Origin: Vitrella brassicaformis CCMP3155
Lineage: Eukaryota; Protista; Chromerida
Assembly (NCBI GenBank): GCA_001179505.1
Contig: CDMY01000646.1
Coordinates: forward strand, 1 to 63,969
DNA: 63,969 nt
Direction: 5' to 3'
Shown here: piece by piece, positions 11,621-26,480 of the stretch
How the letters are laid out: the number at the start of each line of letters is the position of its first letter
Position numbering within the stretch: position 1 is the stretch's first letter
Position numbers and translations under genes: made by a program
Notes under the pieces: generated by a model
What the model saw: the letters and a program-made list of their open reading frames with translations, nothing else
Told to the model about the DNA's origin: nothing
Databases searched by the model: none

Positions 11621-12056
11621 CAGAAGGCCTCCTTTCGTCTCAGATCTCGAACAGGACGCTCCCGTTTGTTTAGCTCGCAGATGCGTGAGCTCGCAGAAGC
11701 GGGGGAAACAACGCGGGAAGGAATGTGCTGGTGGTGTGCTGTGTGTGTGTGCAGATCTCTTCGTCGAGGGCAAGATCTCGGCCATGACTATCACTGTGAC
11801 TCATTCGGTGTGGTTATGGGGACGTCGTGGAGATATGCTCCTTTCTGGTGTCGTTATGGGAGGCTCCAGCTGCTATACTGTCCGCCTGTCTGTCCCGCTT
11901 CTCGTCATTTGCCCTTCCCAGTGTTCCCTTCTCAGTTTGTTTGTCGTTTCTGTTCCTTTCGTTCGTCATCGTTCCTTCCTGTGGTTGCCGGCCACATCAT
12001 CAGCGACCACCACCAAACCACTCTAGCCACCCGAAGGCACCGCTTGTCCAGTCAGT
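11621..12056. promoter_or_regulatory. Putative bidirectional promoter between divergent HTH and deaminase genes
   Basis: Short spacer between divergent start codons. A block of it (about 11750-11860) is conserved at 655-770 and 25455-25565. Confidence 0.45.
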
Positions 12057-13784
12057 ATGACGACTCCCGCTGACCGTGTGGGCGAGGTGTGTGCGACGTG
12101 TGTGGTTCCGTGTGCTGATGGCACCGGCGGCATCTGCGGCAAGCAGAATTTGGCCACGGGGGGCACATCCACCACTTCTGGGCCGCTGGCGGGAAGCAAC
12201 CGGTGGCTGGTGACGGAGGAGTACACTCGACTGCGGCTTTATGGTGAGATCGACCCCAGGGAACCGCTGAAACGGTGAGTGAGTGAGTGAAGCGAGTACG
12301 GCATCCATCCGTTGATGTTGTGTATTGATGCATCAGTTTGGTGGATGAGATGCGTCGCTTCGTGAATGACTGGAAGTCGTTCGAGGCCGCTGGAGAGATG
12401 GACCCCTTCTGGCACCGCAAGTCGAGCAAGACCGTCCTGGCAGTTGTTATGGTCGTCAACAAAAGCGGCCAGGAGATGTTCTACAGGGGCATGAACTCTG
12501 AGATTTCCCTACCCTCAGGTACCATTTGCACGAACCACTGGCAGGAAATACGTGTGGATGCCTCCGTCTCGGTGTGTGCAGGTTCCAATTGTGCGGAGCG
12601 TTCGGCCATATCGACGTGCATATCGAATTCGCTCGACGTGCGGCGCAGCGACTTCCGCGCTATCGCCGTGGCGGATCCCAAGGACGAGCTCAACCCAATC
12701 GCACCTTGTGGAGTGTGCGACGAATGGCTCCAGAAAATACAGGCAAGGACGCACACAACACACGACACAGACAGAGACGGCCGTGTGGATGCATTGGTTG
12801 ATTGATGATGTGTTCAGGAGGAGTCCCCCGGGTTTTCGATTGTGACGTTCACCACGTCCGAGTGCAACGAGATACGCGAGAGATGCCCCCGGCTCTTCCA
12901 GAAGGAGATGCCGCCCTCAGAGGCCCCGCCGCATCTCCGTGAGAACTGGGCGTGTCGGCTGTGCGCCTTCCAGTACAACCCGCCCCGCGTCGCAAGATGT
13001 CAGCAGTGCCGCGAACCTAGATTCAGATTCAGGTCACACACACGCACACACTAGAACCATTCAGATTCAAATTGACGCGACTGCTTCTAACCTGCAGACA
13101 CTAATGAATGCGTATCTGTGTGTGTGTGTGCAGGCCCAGGAATCGTAAGGAGCGCATCAGGGTGATGGGGTTGATGAAGAGCGACATCAGCGGCGTCGAG
13201 TCGGTGGAGCTCGAGCGTCAGGTGGAGGCGGGGGTGCTCCCCGAGATCGACAGCGAGAGCCTCCAACGAATACTCAACGACCTCAGGTCAGTTCAATCTC
13301 AACACAGACACGCGCGCCCCCATAACGTGCATCCCTCCCTCTCCTTGCGTGCAGGTCGCTCAAGTTCATTGAGAAGGCGTGGCCGCCCGCCTCAACGCCA
13401 CGGCACCGGGGGTCGGGATGCATGGCCTCGACGGGTGCCACCCTTCCCGTCCCGGCACCTGCGGGAGGGGCAGGCGGGGTCAGATATCGGCTGACGGCTT
13501 TGGGGAGGGATTACTTAGAGAGGACGACCGAGCTCAGCGAACTGGCAGTCGTCCCCTATGTGTGTGAGAGACAGAAGACTGCCTCTCCCTGCCCTTTGCG
13601 TGTTGCGCGTCGCCTCTTGCGTGTTGCATGTCGTATTCCCCGTGTCTTGCTGTGTCGATTCACTGGCTTCACTGCATTGCATTCCAAATATTGGTGTGTT
13701 ATGTCAGTCCCGTTGCAAATTAGCAGATGTGGTGTGGATGCGATTACAAGTCTTTTCTCTCTCGCATTCTGCACGTTTTCGTGA
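12057..13784 (+). CDS. Cytidine deaminase-like domain + RanBP2-type zinc finger + C-terminal winged helix
   Basis: Exons 12057-12274, 12337-12518, 12582-12742, 12818-13032, 13134-13286, 13355 onward splice in frame. Motifs GMNSEISLPSG|SNCAERSAI and PIAPCGVCDEWL; WACRLCAFQYNPPRVARCQQC; LQRILNDLRSLKFIE...YRLTALGRDYL. The 3' end is uncertain. Confidence 0.8.
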
Positions 13785-13799
13785 TCTTTTTTCCGATGG

Positions 13800-14230
13800 T
13801 AACCTGTGTGAGTCGTGTCTTCCTCATCACATCGTCCTGTCCATGCGATCGCTGCCGTATGTCGTGTGCCCGGGACCGTCCGCGGTATGTGTTCAGTGAG
13901 AGAGGGAGGAGTACGCGCGTGTCTCGATGATGTCTAGCGACTGACTGACTGAGTGAGGGATTGGTGACGTGTATGTGTGTGTCGTCAATGTGTGCCGTCA
14001 GAGAGGCCGATGGCGGGCAGGCGAAAGATATTGATTGTTGCGTTTTGAGCGTGTTGTGGTCGAAGAGTCAGGCCATCGTTCGATTCAGAAAGGCAGTGAA
14101 AAAGAAACAAGTACATGACAAAGTCAGAGAAGAAAGAAATATAGCAAGGCTTAAGAAAGCAAAGAAAGGAAAGAGAGTAAGAAAGAAAAGAAACGAAAAG
14201 ATCAGGTAAGAGGGATGCGAGACTCATTGC
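13800..14230 (+). repeat. Downstream flank duplicated at about 18655-19150
   Basis: Shared blocks such as CATCACATCGTCCTGTCCATGC, GAGAGAGGGAGGAGTACGCGCGTG and GAAGAGTCAGGCCATC..TCGATTCAGAAAGGCAGTGAAAAA. Confidence 0.9.
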
Positions 14231-14639
14231 GAGTTATCGGTACGAAACTGTTTGTGGTACAAGTTGATGACTGATGGTAACTTGTGTGTGCAGATGTGCG
14301 TGTGCATGCCGTGTGGGGTTGCTACCATATGCTTCTGCCTGTATGGTAGCACCACATTTGACGTGTTGATTCGTTTGATGCATTCGTGTCTACCCTGTCG
14401 ATTGACTTTGCTGATGTCAGTCCCGTTGCTGATTGACAGCAAAGGACGATGTGTGACGTGATATTTATGCACGTGATATTTATGCAATGAACGCATGAAA
14501 GCTCACTCTCAACACGTTTTCATAAGTGCAGCATTCGGTCAGCAATCAGTCAGCTATCACCCCACATACCCCATCGAGGCAGGGCGGGACATGAAGCAGA
14601 GCATACGGCAGCAAACAAAATAGGATGCGAATACATCAG

Positions 14640-15736
14640 TCACATTTTACTCACACCACAGCGAAGGCCCTGATCCAGTTGGGGCTCGCCGAGAAGCCAC
14701 TGACGCCGGACCCGGATGGCCTTCGGAGGGACGCTCATTGGATCAGCATGGTTGGCCATCCACTGCTGCATCACGTCCTCAATTTGGTGGTACTTCGGCT
14801 GTCTGTTGCGCTTCTTGTTTGTGTCGATGGCTTTCTTGCCCGGCGCCGGCTGCTTCTTCAGTTTGTGCCGCCACTGCTTGAACTGGCCAGGCTTGAGGCC
14901 CTTCTCTCGTTCGAACCGGGAAATGGTGATGCGCTCGCCGAACTTCTTCCGCCTTTCGAACTCCTCCACCAGCCGCAGCCGCTCGCCAATCGTCACCTCG
15001 CCGGCCCTCTCAGTGGGCACCTGCAAGACACACACACAAACACAGACAGCATTGGTGAGGCGACAGGCAGTGCGCGTATTTGGCAAGTGTGCATCACCTG
15101 CTGTGACGACTGGGGAGCCCTTCGTCTCGGTGAGTGCCGGAGTGGCGGGAGGGACTCTCCGCGATCTCGTGCGGACGGCTCAGGCGGCGGCCACATGACA
15201 TTGGGATGCATTTGGTAGGGCGGGAAGCCATAGTGAGTACGAGGATACTGACCACACACATGAGAGGACAATCACATCAACGAGTGGGCCTCTTTCCTTC
15301 GTTCTCTCACCTGAGGTGTCTGCTGCTGCATGGAGGGGTCGGCGATGGGGTGGCCGCTTGAATGGTGGCCTCCGCCATAGGGCAGATAAGAAACTGCCAG
15401 AGCACCGGCGTGTCGCTCCCATACATCATCTGTGGAACCACACAGTGCGTGATATCAGCCGTTCAGCTCACATGCGTGTCCATCGCGGCTCACTGTGATG
15501 CGACTGCTGAGTCATCCATTCACCAGCCGCACTCGCATCAAAATCACCTGGCACCTGCGAGGAAAGAGAAAGGAACAGATTCGCATCAGCACCACTGACT
15601 CCATCGCTGCACACACCTGTGTGTGAGTGTCATTGAAATGATGCCAGCGGTAATGATGCTCCTCGGCTCCCGTGGGATCATCATGAAATTCGCAGTCCCA
15701 CATTCCCTGTGGGCCAGATCTGCCTGAATCATCCAT
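14640..15736 (-). pseudogene. CENP-B/pogo-type HTH gene, copy C, frameshifted in the second HTH
   Basis: ATG 15736 (MDDSGRSGPQ); HTH exon paralogous to A and B. A 26-nt deletion relative to copy B near 14708-14714 moves GVSGFSASPNWIRAF out of frame. Confidence 0.6.
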
Positions 15737-18654: not shown

Positions 18655-19150
18655 GTATGAGTCGTGTCTTTATCATTACATCTGTCGCTTTATCATTACA
18701 TCTGTCGCTTGCTTCATCACATCGTCCTGTCCATGCAATCGCTGCCTTGTGTAGCGTGGTATGTGTTCGGTGAGAGAGGGAGGAGTACGCGCGTGCCGCG
18801 ATGACGTCTAGCGACTGACTGACTGACTGAGTGACTGATTGGTGATGTGTATGTGTGCGTCGTCAATGTGTGTTGTCGTCGACTGACGGCCGCATTGGCT
18901 CACTTCACTTCAGAGAGAGGCCGATAGCGGGCAGCCCCGAGAGATATCGATCGGTACGAAACTGTGAGTGGAGTGTGGTTACGTTTTCAATCGGTGTTGC
19001 GTGCTGTGTGCCGAAGAGTCAGGCCATCTTTCGATTCAGAAAGGCAGTGAAAAACAAGGAAGTACAAAACAAAGTCAGATGAGAAAGAAATATAGAAAAG
19101 GAAGGGATGAAAGGTAGGAAGAAAAGAAGAGAAAAGATCAAGTAAAAAGA
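18655..19150 (+). repeat. Second copy of the 13800-14230 flank
   Basis: Direct visual alignment to 13800-14230. Confidence 0.9.
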
Positions 19151-20050
19151 ATGCGTGCTTGGCTGTGACCAGCACCCGATGTTCATCAACGACTCCCTGC
19201 CCAGGGATTTCTTCCTCTTATGCATTTGTGCTCTTGCTGTGGTTGGCTGTTCGTGTATCTGTTGTGGGTGCGTGCGGGTGTGCGTACGTGTGTGTGTGTG
19301 CGCATCGGACTGCATGGACACGGTAGCTCACGTAAGAGCACGCTTCATACAAACTGACGTCAGTTGCGTTCCTCTCCGTCTATTCAAGTGGCGCGAACAG
19401 CTTGCCCGGATATTGTGGTGACAATTTGAAAATGACATCACTCTCGACGAGTCACATTCATTTAGTCATGGACGCATGTCATAATACGCTCAACACACCC
19501 TGACACACACGTGGATGTACCAGATGGGGAGAGATGTGATAAGTGTGTGTGCGTGCGTCCAGCCCCCATCTGCTGCACTTCCCCAAAGTACCACAGATGT
19601 GACGCATGGATGGCAACATGATACGGACTGTACAACAGTGTACAACAGCATGAGAAATGACAGCAGACAGCGCAGACACAAAGAAGAGAAGAGAAGAGAA
19701 GATGCAGCCAATCAACCATACAACCGTAAAATCACAGTAATGCTGCGCCAATACAAACGACCTCAGCCCCAATCCGCACAACCAATAGCCCGATAGACAC
19801 AACAGCGAGCCATGGCATCAATCAATAAAAGCCACATTAAGACCAGTATGTGTGATACGGCATACATACATATATACATGCATCCATATCGGCTGGATGA
19901 ACGCAACACACACACACACCATCAAAGCATGTCATGTCGACATTTCTCACACCACAGTCAGCCTCCAGACTCGCCTCCGTTAGCCATGATGTCTCCGAAG
20001 CACAGCAGACACATTCGGCAAACAAGTGACATCATATACTCGAATTACAC

Positions 20051-23084: not shown

Positions 23085-25570
23085 CCGTCATCAGCAGCCG
23101 ATTCGTCGTCTGCTTGGCCCTGCTGGGGCGGATATCCTTCCGAGGCAAAGGAGGCAGGTGGGACGCTGCTAGCGGCCGAAGCGACAGCTGCAGCTGCAGC
23201 ATGTGTATCTGGCTCCGGCTGGCCAGTGAGGGGAATGGGGAGGGGAAGGAGAGGGCCCGCAGCGGCTGACGGGCCGCCGAACGTGTCAATCAGCTGGCGG
23301 CCAGGCAATATCATACCCTTCTCTCACACTCGTGCCATCGGCGTCGTCAGGGACGGCAGCAGACGACATATGTGGCTGTGGCTGGTGAGTGAGGGTAAGG
23401 GCAAGGGGGAGATGATGGGGGTGAGGCGGACTTATTTCGGGCAAGGGTGAAGAGCAGGGAGCGTCTGGTACGCCAGTCTGAGGCACGGCGCCGATCCACT
23501 GATTCACAGTCGCTTCAAACTCCTCCTCGCTCTACAGGGTGCACACAACAACACACCATCATCGCTGGGTCTGATGAATGCGTTCATATTCGTCTCTTAC
23601 GGTCATTCCATCGGTGTTGTCGATGCCAGAAGCAGCAGCAGCAGCAGCTGCTGCTGCTGCGGGGAGCTCAGGGGCTGTGGGACGGTGCTGCCCAGACAAT
23701 AAGAGAGTGAGAATGTGAGACAATGGCGGATCTCTTGTTGTGCCTGCCTGCCTGTCATCTTTCTGACCTGTTGGAAGCGTTCTCTGAAACCCCTGACCCA
23801 GCTATCGCTCGCCGAGAAGCCACTGACGCCCAGCCGCATCTTGATCTCCATCGCTTTTTCTCTGATGTCCTTTGTGGGAACACTCATTGGGTCACGCTGC
23901 CCAGCCATCCACTGCCGCATCTCATCCTCGATCGGCTGGTACTTAGGTTGCCTGATGCGCTTCTTGTCTGCATCGGTCACTTGCACACCGACCTCCCTCT
24001 GCTTCATTAGCTTGTAGCGCCACTGCCTGAATTGGCCATACTTGATGCCGTTCTCCTTGGCGAACTGGGCCATGCTGATCCGCTCGCCGGACTGCTTCCG
24101 CCTCTCAAACTCCTCCACCAGCCGCAGCCGCTCGCCGATAGTGGTCTCCGGCGCCCTCTCAGTGGACACCTTCATGACACAGAAACAAAGAGAGGCTATG
24201 TGACGGGCAGTGCGTGAATGGAGTGGTGGGAGGAATCAGAGTCATACGTTAGGGGCATCTCCCGCAGTGGGCGCCAGCTGGGGAATTTGGTACGGCGGGA
24301 AGCCATAGTGAGTGTGAGGATACTGCGCAGACACAGAAGAGGACAATCACATCAACGAGTGTGCCTTTCTCGTTCGTTCTCTCACCTGAGGTGTCTGCTG
24401 ATGCATGGAGGGGTCGGCGATGGGGTGGCTGGCACGGTCGTCGTCTCCAAAGAGCCATTGCAGGCCGTCGAGTGGGTCGTCTGGTGGGCTGACATGTGCC
24501 AATGGCTGACTCCCACCAAAGCACTCAGCGTCCCCTACAGCCACCATGCAATCGACGGTTGCATCTTCGCCTGCACGGCAATCGGAGCGTCTTGCGTGTC
24601 CGCTCACTTGATGCGTATCCGTCGGCTGCAGGGTCACTTCCTGATTGCGGCTCTCTGGGATGCGACTGAGTCCCCCATCCACCAGCGGCACTCCCAGACA
24701 CATAGCCGGGTGGCTGCAGCCAACACACACACACGGAGAAAGAGAGAGAGAGGTCAAGTGATGCGATCCAAGGACTGCCGAGTATGCCCACCTGATAAGA
24801 GCCGTAGTAAGGAGCTGCAGCTGCGGCAGCGCAACCACCATCTGCCACCTGTGAGAAAAGGGTAAGGAACAGAGTCACATCAGCACCACTGACTCCATCG
24901 CTGCATACACCTGTGTGTGAGTGTCATCACAATTATGCTCCTCGGCCAATTCGGTGGCTCCCGCAGCCTGGAAAAAAGCACAAACAGGCACATCAGCCAG
25001 CAGCCAAAGATCTGTGTGTGTGTCGGCAAAGGACGTCACCTGTGGGTGAGATCTGAACGAGTCGTCCATCAGAAGGCCTCCTTTGGGCAGATCTCCGGAA
25101 AAGGACCTCAGATGAGGACGCCTTGGTTGGTTGGTTATTGTATTTCGAGACTCGTGTCTGTAACCCCGAGGGGATCCTGTCCAGGTCACGCACTAAACTA
25201 GCAGCATGCACATGCATAGAAGCATGCACACGGCCTGTCTCCCCATCCCACCCACCCACCCAGTCGACACGCACGTGCCACCCTATGATGGTCAGAAAAA
25301 TCGCTGTCGACACCGGTTGCCTTGTGCTCGGGGAATAGCGAAGGGAAGACCAGTTGCTCTAACTCAGATAAGCTCGCAGACCTTTGAGCTCGCACCAAAT
25401 GGCCGTCGCAGGCATGTCCTCTCTGTCTGCTGGTGTGCTGTGCTGTGTGTGTGTGCAGATCTCTTCGTCAAGGGCAAGATCTCGGCGGTGACTGTCACTG
25501 TGACTCATTCGGTGTCGTTATGGGGACGTCGTGGAGATATGCTCCTTTCTGGCGTCGTTATGGGAGGGCC
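23085..25570. repeat. Segmental duplicate of about 9780-11870 (low-complexity piece + HTH gene + promoter)
   Basis: Long near-identical blocks, e.g. 23447-23560 vs 10033-10145 and 24590-24920 vs 11150-11480. Confidence 0.95.
23603..25069 (-). CDS. CENP-B/pogo-type tandem HTH protein, copy B (no DDE domain)
   Basis: ATG 25069 (MDDSFRSHPQ). Last exon TIGERLRLVEEF...RQPKYQPIEDEMRQWM...IREKAMEIKMRLGVSGFSASDSWVRGFRERF. Confidence 0.75.
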
Positions 25571-26480
25571 GGCTTGGTATACTGCTCACGGTATTCCTAC
25601 AGCTCGTCAGGCTCTGCTGTTCCGCCGTTGTCAGCGCACCGCCATGAACGGTGAGGTATCCACGTTCACTTTCGCACGCCCCTCCCACACACACTGGCTG
25701 AGATCTGCCACTTGTGTTGATTTGCAGCCGGTCTGACTCCTGGGTGGCGAGCGTTCCTTCTACGTGGCCTTCATGACCACTGGGACGATGTCGAGCTCGA
25801 TCGCCAGCGCTCTCAGTCGCTGGCGGACCCGACGGACGTGACAGCGCCACCGAAGCATCGCCAGGTGTGGCTCACCGCGGCGAGTGCCGAGCGCATCACG
25901 GGTCAGCAGGGGTGGCAGCTGGCGCTCCTTCCGGCGGCCATCGACCAGGACGCCCGGGACCGGCCCCTCCGCCACCTGTTCCGGCTGCAGGCCTTCCGCA
26001 AACCGGATATGAACCTGACCGAGCAGTCGGCTCATCAGGACGGCCAGTGCTGCGTCCTCGTGTACTGGGGAGGGGAGCTGGTGGATGAGGTGCGTTACGT
26101 GCCGGTCGACAAGGGTTCGGATGAGAAGCTGTGTGCGACGTGTGTGGTGCCGTGTGCTGATGGCACCGGCGGCATCTGCGGCAAGCAGAACACCTTCCGC
26201 AACGTCGTCAACTCGCACCTGCGCAAGACACACAAACTGACCAACGAGGATGCGCAGGTATGTGTGTGAGGACATGTCTTCTGCGCATGGACGGCCTCGT
26301 GTATGCTGTGTTGTCCTGCGTGGTGTCTGCAGCGGCTTCTTGCCTCTCTTGGGCTATCGGCGCCGATGACTGTCACCAACACACGTACGATGCGACGCGG
26401 TGCGGGGGATGGACTGAATGTGCTGTCTGTCCATCCACCGTGTCTGTCTTTCTGCAGATGTGTACCACCACCATGGGTCG
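25117..26480 (+). repeat. Segmental duplicate of about 297-1680 (promoter + BED gene 5' exons)
   Basis: Direct alignment with scattered substitutions. Confidence 0.95.

What the first reader, a model, noticed from the sequence alone, without database searches (positions are those of the whole stretch)
12057..13784. Cytidine deaminase fused to RanBP2 finger and winged helix: candidate nucleic-acid-targeted deaminase
Seen: CAE and PCxxC zinc ligands (three-Cys type), then W-x-C-x2-C-x4-N-x6-C-x2-C and a wHTH ending YRLTALG. Known: free-nucleoside CDAs are usually stand-alone; some RanBP2 fingers (ZRANB2) bind ssRNA, and wHTH domains bind nucleic acids. Inference: the appended binding modules suggest a polymer substrate (RNA or DNA editing or mutagenesis) rather than pyrimidine salvage.
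Basis: partly seen in the sequence, partly recalled or inferred. Interest (0 to 1): 0.75.

Follow-up and report, generated by a model that had tools for sequence, protein, structure and literature searches.

The report
Cytidine-deaminase-like enzyme with finger and winged helix
This is a real, expressed six-exon gene of the alga Vitrella brassicaformis that joins an intact cytidine-deaminase-type domain of an already described family to a small zinc finger and a winged helix; its substrate is untested, and the evidence does not favour RNA or DNA editing over a nucleoside or nucleotide substrate.

Summary
Positions 12057-13784 (+) hold a six-exon gene. Spliced contigs from two runs remove all five introns at the borders I modelled.

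- **Deaminase:** exons 2-3 encode a Pfam PF14421 (LmjF36.5940-like, CDD/CDA-derived) deaminase with intact CAE and PCxxC motifs.
- **Finger:** exon 4 carries a RanBP2-type finger.
- **Winged helix:** exons 5-6 encode a MarR/PadR-like winged helix.
- **Annotation:** the database protein (CEM27920.1, 333 aa) splices out the conserved wing. The RNA contigs support a 452-aa product instead.
- **Distribution:** the three-domain architecture recurs in Chromera, Colpodella, gregarines and dinoflagellates.

The family, and its fusion to a "ubiquitin-binding Zn ribbon" in Perkinsus, were described in 2011, together with the editing or mutator speculation. This scan had already noted a gene with the same architecture elsewhere in this genome.

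- The finger lacks the ZRANB2 ssRNA signature and looks most like NZF and Nup153 fingers.
- The catalytic domain is closest to free-nucleoside deaminases and keeps their sugar-binding Asn-x-Glu.
- A related clade in the same half of the family tree is fused to a CTP-cytidylyltransferase-like domain.
- A published base-editor screen did not list this family among the ssDNA-active clades.

Verdict: a new member of a known, uncharacterised family.

The parts
11724..11880 (+). 5' UTR/promoter-proximal segment shared with two other genes of the window
   Evidence: 90-91% identical to 632-790 and 25428-25584. RNA contigs cover 11834 onward without a splice.
12057..12274 (+). Exon 1 (ATG 12057). Residues 1-41 are predicted disordered. 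The conserved family part starts near RWLVTEEYTRLRL.
   Evidence: First in-frame start codon. AF2 pLDDT is below 50 for residues 1-41. Donor GTGAGT at 12275.
12085..12148 (+). 64-nt Cys-rich coding patch borrowed from another gene family
   Evidence: 95-97% identical to 1333-1396 and 26127-26190. Absent from paralog P0002.
12275..12336 (+). Intron 1, 62 nt, GT-AG
   Evidence: Skipped in contigs of X6 and X7.
12337..12518 (+). Exon 2: N-terminal half of the deaminase domain. Holds the FWHRKS motif and the invariant Asn (12494-12496) and Glu (12500-12502).
   Evidence: PF14421 hit at E 4e-10 for this exon alone. Invariant N126/E128, aligned to B. subtilis CDA CNIEN.
12519..12581 (+). Intron 2, 63 nt, GT-AG, in frame and without a stop
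   Evidence: Skipped in contigs of X6 and X7. Absent from P0001 and all relatives.
12582..12742 (+). Exon 3: catalytic core. CAE at 12590-12598, PCGVC at 12704-12718.
   Evidence: PF14421 and PF00383 hits. C137/A138/E139/R140/C176/C179 invariant.
12743..12817 (+). Intron 3, 75 nt, GC-AG, contains an in-frame stop
   Evidence: Skipped in contigs of X6 and X7; within the 4-nt ambiguity the borders read GC..AG.
12818..13032 (+). Exon 4: last strands of the deaminase fold, a linker, the RanBP2-type zinc finger (12947-13009) and a basic RFRF tail
   Evidence: PDB hits to TAB2/3, Npl4, HOIP and RanBP2 fingers. Family alignment and profile. AF2 pLDDT 84-91 over the finger.
13033..13133 (+). Intron 4, 101 nt, GT-AG
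   Evidence: Skipped in contigs of X6 and X7.
13134..13286 (+). Exon 5: basic linker plus helices 1-3 of the winged helix
   Evidence: Aligns with H1-H3 of relatives. P0001 residues 259-333 match WH domains at Z 5.2-6.0.
13287..13354 (+). Intron 5, 68 nt, GT-AG
   Evidence: Skipped in contigs of X6 and X7.
13355..13784 (+). Exon 6: end of helix 3 (LKFIEK), a 35-aa low-complexity insert, the wing strand VRYRLTALGRDYL (13482-13520), a non-conserved tail of about 80 aa, and stop TGA at 13782-13784
   Evidence: Contigs run unspliced from 13352 to 14300. The wing motif is conserved in relatives.
13412..13707 (+). Intron of the public annotation (CEM27920.1) that removes the wing. Not seen in the RNA contigs.
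   Evidence: P0001 ends ...RHRG-PVAN, which requires this splice. X6 and X7 contigs are continuous here.

Best explanation
The gene encodes a catalytically competent zinc deaminase of the LmjF36.5940-like family (Pfam PF14421), a branch of the CDD/CDA cytidine deaminases.

Chemistry (inferred from the family). Cys137, Cys176 and Cys179 hold a zinc-bound water. Glu139 shuttles the proton. Cytosine C4 is hydrolysed to uracil.

Substrate (inferred). The most likely substrate is a cytosine on a monomer-like sugar: free (deoxy)cytidine, a cytidine nucleotide or CDP-compound, or at most a residue with a free 3'-OH. The pocket keeps the invariant Asn126-x-Glu128 that grips the sugar 3'-OH in classical CDAs.

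Appended modules (inferred). The RanBP2/NZF-type finger, the basic linker and the MarR/PadR-like winged helix would then place or regulate the enzyme, for example on a ubiquitin- or Ran-like partner or on nucleic acid, rather than define a polymer substrate.

What is shown: the gene structure, its expression, family membership, the three domains and their conservation. What is inferred: substrate class and the role of the modules.
For: - **Gene and transcript:** five introns are removed at the modelled borders in contigs of two runs from two studies, and contigs that overlap in exon 5 link exon 1 to exon 6.
- **Family membership:** PF14421 scores 91 bits on the window and 121.8 bits on P0001, against a cutoff of 27.1.
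- **Catalytic and sugar-binding residues:** both are invariant in 37 members and align with B. subtilis CDA N42/E44/C53-E55.
- **Fold:** the 50 best Foldseek hits are tetrameric CDAs and blasticidin S deaminase. VIA gives Z 12.6/11.2/10.3/9.7/9.4 for CDA/BSD, against 7.8 or lower for every other deaminase class.
- **Related branch:** in the core-domain tree the finger+WH lineages share one half with a clade (100/99 support) fused to a domain that matches ethanolamine-phosphate and choline-phosphate cytidylyltransferases (3elb E 7.5e-16; PF01467 above cutoff).
- **Finger class:** NZF/Nup153-like rather than ssRNA-type.
- **ssDNA screen:** LmjF365940 clades were in the set screened as nCas9 base editors and are not among the clades reported active on ssDNA.
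Against: - Nothing about the substrate is measured.
- Fusions of this deaminase family to nucleic-acid-type modules arose at least twice: CCCH fingers in kinetoplastids, and winged helix plus RanBP2 finger here. That is unusual for a salvage enzyme.
- It scores far below the NCBIfam cytidine deaminase equivalog cutoff (27.8 against 113.65 bits).
- It has family-specific conserved basic residues (WHRKS-x-K) that could bind phosphate of either a nucleotide or a backbone.
- Asn at this position is also kept in polynucleotide deaminases (my own knowledge), so only the Glu is discriminating.
- The base-editor screen used truncated domains and is weak negative evidence.
- The tree does not resolve whether the cytidylyltransferase-fused clade is the closest relative of the finger+WH lineages.
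Confidence: 0.45

Rival explanations
1. Nucleic-acid-targeted deaminase. The winged helix, the basic linker and perhaps the finger bind RNA or DNA and present an internal cytosine to the CDA-like pocket, giving C-to-U editing or mutagenesis.
For: - The three-domain architecture is conserved from chromerids and gregarines to dinoflagellates.
- The winged helix is of the MarR/PadR/HxlR type, and most of its solved look-alikes bind DNA.
- A strongly basic stretch follows the finger.
- Kinetoplastid members carry CCCH RNA-binding fingers.
- The catalytic site is intact.
Against: - The finger lacks the ssRNA-binding signature.
- The fold is nearest to free-nucleoside enzymes, with a Z gap to TadA, ADAT and DddB, and no APOBEC hit.
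- The Asn-x-Glu 3'-OH dyad is invariant.
- The clade was not reported ssDNA-active in the base-editor screen.
- No RNA-DNA differences were seen at this locus, which says nothing about targets elsewhere.
- Winged helices in eukaryotes often bind proteins (cullin, ESCRT-II and Rpa2 hits).
Confidence: 0.3
2. Adaptor or sensor role. The finger binds ubiquitin or Ran and the winged helix binds a protein partner. The deaminase-like domain serves mainly as a cytidine-nucleotide-binding or regulatory module rather than as a flux-carrying enzyme.
For: - The closest single-sequence finger matches are ubiquitin-binding NZFs (TAB2/3, Npl4, HOIP, TRABID).
- Iyer et al. called the Perkinsus finger ubiquitin-binding.
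- WH matches include cullin WHB and ESCRT-II.
Against: - All catalytic residues are invariant across the family, which argues for catalysis.
- The NZF Thr-Phe dipeptide is Ala-Phe here and is not conserved in dinoflagellate members.
Confidence: 0.1
3. Gene-model artefact: the finger and winged-helix exons belong to a different transcript from the deaminase exons.
For: No single contig spans the whole gene.
Against: - One 797-nt contig joins exons 1-5.
- A 1740-nt contig joins exons 5-6.
- The two overlap in exon 5, in two runs of different studies.
- Relatives in five other lineages have the same domain order in one protein.
Confidence: 0.03

Closest known systems
[quoted passage not shown]
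   Same: Same deaminase family (121.8 bits on P0001). Same CAE/PCxxC three-Cys site. The same kind of RanBP2/NZF-type finger follows the deaminase. Same alveolate lineage. The same speculation about mRNA editing or DNA mutagenesis applies.
   Different: The paper does not mention a winged helix after the finger (the terms 'winged' and 'wHTH' occur 0 times). Here the winged helix is conserved in Vitrella, Chromera, Colpodella, gregarines and dinoflagellates. I did not examine whether Perkinsus also has it.
Homotetrameric free-nucleoside cytidine deaminases (B. subtilis 1JTK, human 1MQ0, B. pseudomallei 3DMO) and blasticidin S deaminase
   Same: Closest solved folds (Z 9.4-12.6; Foldseek E about 1e-6). 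Three-Cys zinc site, CAER, PCxxC, and the Asn-x-Glu sugar 3'-OH dyad at identical spacing.
   Different: Far below the NCBIfam equivalog cutoff (27.8 against 113.65 bits). Extra N-terminal strand and helix, the family-specific WHRKS and SLPxGS motifs, and about 240 extra residues carrying the finger and winged helix. Oligomeric state unknown.
NZF and RanBP2-type zinc fingers (TAB2/TAB3, Npl4, HOIP, Nup153, RanBP2; ZRANB2 as the ssRNA-binding subclass)
   Same: Trp plus four Cys zinc ribbon with the central Asn. TAB2 E 1e-4 with the single sequence. Nup153 and TAB3 about 1e-6 with the family profile.
   Different: One extra residue between Cys2 and Asn. Ala-Phe instead of the ubiquitin-binding Thr-Phe. 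No Leu-Val Ran motif. No aromatic after the Asn and no C-N-x-C as in ZRANB2. The ligand class is therefore open.
ADAR1 (Z-alpha winged helix plus deaminase), as a functional analogy only
   Same: A winged helix combined with a zinc deaminase in one chain.
   Different: Different deaminase clade and different domain order. The Z-alpha match was not significant (E 1.3). This is an analogy, not homology.
APOBEC/AID, TadA/ADAT and DYW polynucleotide deaminases
   Same: Same deaminase superfold and zinc chemistry.
   Different: No APOBEC hit in the top 50 of either structure search. TadA and ADAT2 score only Z about 7. C-A-E rather than H-A/V-E. The CDA-type Glu after the Asn is retained.

Membership tests
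LmjF36.5940-like CDD/CDA deaminases (PF14421) | Score above the Pfam gathering threshold | tested here: met
   91.1 bits for window 12338-12742 and 121.8 bits for P0001, against a cutoff of 27.1.
LmjF36.5940-like CDD/CDA deaminases (PF14421) | C[H]AE in helix 2 and PCxxC in helix 3 | tested here: met
   CAE at 12590-12598 and PCGVC at 12704-12718. Invariant in 37 members.
LmjF36.5940-like CDD/CDA deaminases (PF14421) | Deaminase fold closest to CDD/CDA | tested here: met
   AF2 core pLDDT above 90. CDA/BSD at Z 9.4-12.6, other classes at 7.8 or lower.
LmjF36.5940-like CDD/CDA deaminases (PF14421) | Deaminase activity and substrate | not testable with these tools
   I found no characterised member in the searchable literature.
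RanBP2-type zinc finger (PF00641) | W-x-C-x2-4-C-x3-N-x6-C-x2-C pattern | tested here: inconclusive
   The window has x4 before the Asn, one residue more than the pattern. Dinoflagellate-type and other compact relatives have the canonical x3, while Chromera Cvel_2011 and Colpodella share the longer spacing. Trp and four Cys are invariant.
RanBP2-type zinc finger (PF00641) | Profile match | tested here: inconclusive
   Pfam gave no hit at E<=1 for the window. Relatives are sub-threshold (23.3 bits against 27). The family profile hits Nup153 and TAB3 fingers at about 1e-6, and UniProt names P0001 a RanBP2-type domain-containing protein.
NZF (ubiquitin-binding subclass) | Thr-Phe after Cys2 and a hydrophobic residue between Cys3 and Cys4 | tested here: not met
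   Ala-Phe and Gln here. The dipeptide is not conserved in dinoflagellate members. TAB2 also has Gln at the second site.
ZRANB2-type ssRNA-binding finger | Aromatic residue after the Asn, Arg-Arg, and C-N-x-C (signature recalled from my own knowledge of Loughlin 2009 and Nguyen 2011) | tested here: not met
   The sequence after the Asn is P-P-R-V-A-R, then C-Q-Q-C. The ZRANB2 PDB match is only E 1.8e-3 with the profile.
Winged helix-turn-helix (MarR/PadR/HxlR-like) | H1-b1-H2-H3-b2-wing-b3 topology | tested here: met
   Model of relative P0041:212-304, with all 50 best Foldseek hits being wHTH. The window's exons 5 and 6 align to its two halves. P0001 residues 259-333 match WH domains at Z 5.2-6.0. 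The window's own joined domain was not folded.
Winged helix-turn-helix (MarR/PadR/HxlR-like) | Nucleic-acid binding | not testable with these tools
   Fold matches include both DNA-binding regulators and protein-binding WH domains.
Free cytidine deaminase (TIGR01354 equivalog) | Score above the NCBIfam cutoff; stand-alone protein of about 130-150 aa | tested here: not met
   27.8 bits against a cutoff of 113.65. The product is 452 aa with two extra domains.
Polynucleotide deaminases (APOBEC/AID, TadA/ADAT, DYW) | Sequence or fold membership | tested here: not met
   No Pfam hit. No APOBEC in the top 50. TadA and ADAT2 at Z about 7, well below the CDAs.

The most novel reading that the evidence does not exclude
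The finger plus winged-helix branch of PF14421 is a conserved myzozoan polynucleotide C-to-U editor or DNA cytosine deaminase. It would be the first CDD/CDA-clade enzyme with dedicated targeting modules, and a candidate for the still unassigned mRNA editing activities of dinoflagellates.
Probability: 0.2. Interest if true: 0.8.

Novelty: new member of a known kind. Interest (0 to 1): 0.35.

Why it matters
No member of PF14421 that I could find has a measured substrate, yet the family is widespread in protists and has an intact active site. If the finger plus winged-helix branch acted on RNA or DNA, it would be a new class of eukaryotic editing enzyme and a possible base-editing tool. If it acts on cytidine nucleotides, it points to an unrecognised, locally tethered step of pyrimidine or CDP-lipid-precursor metabolism in alveolates.

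For annotation, the public protein of this gene lacks the conserved wing because of an unsupported intron. Domain searches on it therefore miss the winged helix.

Tried and rejected
- **Pfam and NCBIfam on exons 4, 5 and 6 alone:** no hits. PDB sequence search with exon 6: only chance hits.
- **Word search with P0001:** only 7 proteins and no 452-aa version of this gene, so the correct product has no database reference.
- **The search for related loci with the broad alignment A2:** Repeated with the trimmed core A3.
- **Bacterial gene neighbourhoods of PF14421 members (L002-L009):** neighbours are heterogeneous (kinase, Usp, peroxiredoxin, RHS). No operon clue to the substrate.
- **PADLOC defence models:** no hit for P0001 or the bacterial fusions.
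- **N-terminal domain of the bacterial and algal branch:** no PDB sequence hit. Only a weak Atlas lead to Csm6 CARF domains (score 0.77, below the level the tool calls meaningful), so I do not rely on it.
- **Exon-1 Cys cluster as a fourth zinc module:** rejected. It is a 64-nt patch copied from another gene family, absent from the paralog, and predicted disordered.
- **ADAR Z-alpha-like winged helix:** E 1.3, not significant.
- **Literature on kinetoplastid CCCH-deaminase members:** no functional data.

Full report
**Gene structure and expression**

The region is eukaryotic and spliced. From the sequence I modelled six exons on the + strand:
- E1 12057-12274
- E2 12337-12518
- E3 12582-12742
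- E4 12818-13032
- E5 13134-13286
- E6 13355-13784

The introns are 62, 63, 75, 101 and 68 nt. Four are GT-AG and the third is GC-AG.

Laying Logan contigs of four runs on 11700-14300 showed all five introns skipped at these borders in X6 and X7, which come from two different studies. Their library kind is not on record. Contigs that lack five introns at GT/GC-AG borders indicate cDNA.

A 797-nt contig joins exons 1-5. A 1740-nt contig joins exons 5-6 and runs unspliced to beyond 14300. The two overlap in exon 5. No single contig spans the gene, but the 'other transcript' objection is largely refuted. The main contigs show no base differences from the genome.

**Organism and annotation**

A full HMMER search with the exon 2-3 read-through returned P0001 at 97% identity. 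The shortfall from 100% reflects intron 2, which the read-through query retained. P0001 is CEM27920.1 / A0A0G4GFE1 of Vitrella brassicaformis CCMP3155, named 'RanBP2-type domain-containing protein'.

P0001 has 333 aa. It is identical to E1-E5 plus the first 19 residues of E6, then ends PVAN. That ending requires an extra intron at 13412-13707, which the RNA contigs do not show.

The unspliced reading gives 452 aa. It contains VRYRLTALGRDYL, a motif conserved in relatives. I therefore take the annotated 3' end to be wrong, or at best a minor isoform. Contigs cannot exclude rare variants.

A paralog, P0002 (CEL99527.1), is 66% identical. Paralog-like contigs also touched exon 5 and the wing region.

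**Deaminase domain**

- Pfam PF14421 (LmjF365940-deam) scores 91 bits on the window and 121.8 bits on P0001, against a cutoff of 27.1.
- NCBIfam cytidine deaminase equivalogs are hit far below their cutoffs (27.8 against 113.65 bits).
- In a 37-member alignment, N126, E128, C137, A138, E139, R140, C176 and C179 are invariant, and the WHRKS motif is nearly so.
- The HMMER alignment to B. subtilis CDA (1JTK) places N126-x-E128 on the enzyme's CNIEN motif and CAER on CAER, at identical spacing. From my own knowledge of CDA structures, that Asn and Glu hydrogen-bond the ribose 3'-OH. The Asn is also kept in APOBEC and TadA enzymes, but the Glu is not.
- The AlphaFold model of P0001 has a core pLDDT above 90 and a disordered N-terminus, residues 1-41.
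- Foldseek's 50 best PDB hits are all tetrameric CDAs or blasticidin S deaminase.
- An exhaustive VIA search gives Z 12.6, 11.2, 10.3, 9.7 and 9.4 for CDA/BSD. The next scores are 7.8 (guanine deaminase), 7.2 (TadA, dCMP deaminase), 7.1 (ADAT2) and 6.7 (DddB). No APOBEC is listed.

**Finger**

The exon-4 peptide hits TAB2/TAB3 NZF (E 1e-4 and 2.6e-4), then Npl4, HOIP, RanBP2 and TRABID. In 17 relatives the Trp and four Cys are invariant. The family profile hits single Nup153 and TAB3 fingers at about 1e-6, RBM10 at 2e-4 and ZRANB2 at 2e-3. It is a RanBP2-type zinc ribbon, although Pfam's model gives no hit for the window's own finger and stays below threshold in relatives.

The ligand class is not settled by sequence:
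- The ubiquitin-binding Thr-Phe is Ala-Phe here and is absent in dinoflagellate members.
- The ZRANB2-type aromatic after the Asn and the C-N-x-C are absent.
- The Nup153 Leu-Val is absent.

**Winged helix**

Exons 5 and 6 align to the two halves of the post-finger region of relatives. The order is a basic R-F/Y-x-F stretch, H1, a variable insert, H2, H3 ending in LKFIE, a variable insert, then Y-x-LT-x-LG.
- The profile's best PDB hits are MarR (E 0.0047), HpaR, PadR, MecI, RPC6 and cullin.
- Relatives give sub-threshold Pfam hits to Rio2_N and Replic_Relax.
- The AlphaFold model of compact relative P0041:212-304 has the canonical topology at pLDDT 78.6.
- All 50 best Foldseek matches are winged helices of the HxlR, PadR, MarR, ArsR or Rpa2 type, at TM 0.44-0.66.
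- P0001's own residues 259-333 match WH domains at Z 5.2-6.0.

**Distribution and relatives**

The three-domain architecture occurs in:
- Chromera (Cvel_2011, Cvel_5494)
- Colpodella
- gregarines (Gregarina, Blabericola, Digyalum, Lankesteria)
- dinoflagellates (Effrenium, Crypthecodinium)

A tree of 97 core domains splits the family into two halves at 93/94 support. One half holds the bacterial and algal members with an unknown N-terminal domain. The other half holds the finger+WH lineages, which are unresolved among themselves, together with a 100/99-supported clade fused to a C-terminal domain.

That C-terminal domain exceeds the PF01467 cutoff. It matches ethanolamine-phosphate cytidylyltransferase (3elb, E 7.5e-16) and choline-phosphate cytidylyltransferases. 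This associates the window's half of the family with CTP-type ligands. It is an inference by domain fusion, not proof.

Bacterial members are Myxococcota and other proteobacterial MAGs with 40-49% core identity. They have no conserved neighbourhood and no PADLOC hit.

**Literature**

Iyer et al. 2011 (PMC3239186) defined the LmjF36.5940-like clade. [quoted passage not shown] They suggested possible mRNA editing or DNA mutagenesis. They do not mention a winged helix.

Huang et al. [quoted passage not shown] LmjF365940 was one of their families. They reported ssDNA activity for five other clades and did not list LmjF365940. This is weak negative evidence. I found no functional study of any member.

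**Verdict**

The family and the finger fusion are known, so this is a new member of a known, uncharacterised kind. The conserved winged helix and the corrected gene model are modest additions.

**Limits**

I did not search or fold the joined 452-aa product.

Noticed in passing
window 13412-13707: The public annotation (CEM27920.1, 333 aa) places an intron here that removes the conserved wing of the winged helix. RNA contigs of two runs are continuous across it, giving a 452-aa product.
   Followed up: yes
window 11724-11880 and 12085-12148, compared with 632-790/1333-1396 and 25428-25584/26127-26190: The 5' UTR region and a 64-nt Cys-rich patch of exon 1 are 90-97% identical to the 5' parts of two copies of an unrelated, unnamed gene family in the same window. 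There the patch continues as ...TF-x-NVVNSHLRKTH. The two segments lie 205 nt apart here and 543 nt apart there, which suggests a chimeric or gene-converted 5' end.
   Followed up: partly
window 12743-12817: Intron 3 is a GC-AG intron, confirmed by spliced contigs. Intron 2 (12519-12581) is 63 nt, in frame and stop-free, so retaining it would insert 21 residues next to the catalytic CAE.
   Followed up: partly
P0028, P0031, P0155 and relatives (dinoflagellate and MMETSP proteins): A well-supported related clade of PF14421 deaminases is fused to a C-terminal ethanolamine-/choline-phosphate cytidylyltransferase-like domain. In P0155 the usual HxGH motif appears replaced, so the domain may only bind nucleotide. 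This fusion is not mentioned in the 2011 family description.
   Followed up: partly
L002:5185-6363, L006:4918-6363, L009:4900-6351 (Myxococcota and other proteobacterial MAGs): Bacterial PF14421 members carry an unassigned N-terminal domain of about 250-330 aa. The only lead is a weak Atlas similarity to Csm6 CARF sensor domains (0.77), below a meaningful level.
   Followed up: partly
P0002 (CEL99527.1, Vitrella paralog): The annotated paralog lacks the first half of the finger, and its sequence after helix 1 diverges completely. RNA contigs of a paralog keep LKFI(E/D) and the wing region at about 91% nucleotide identity. Its gene model is probably also wrong.
   Followed up: no
window 13824-14219 compared with 18714-19155; contig running about 694 nt beyond 14300: The A/G-rich 3' UTR region is 67% similar to a stretch downstream of the neighbouring gene. 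The transcript contig continues far past the stop, towards a minus-strand ORF at 14640-15086, so there may be a long 3' UTR or convergent overlapping transcripts.
   Followed up: no
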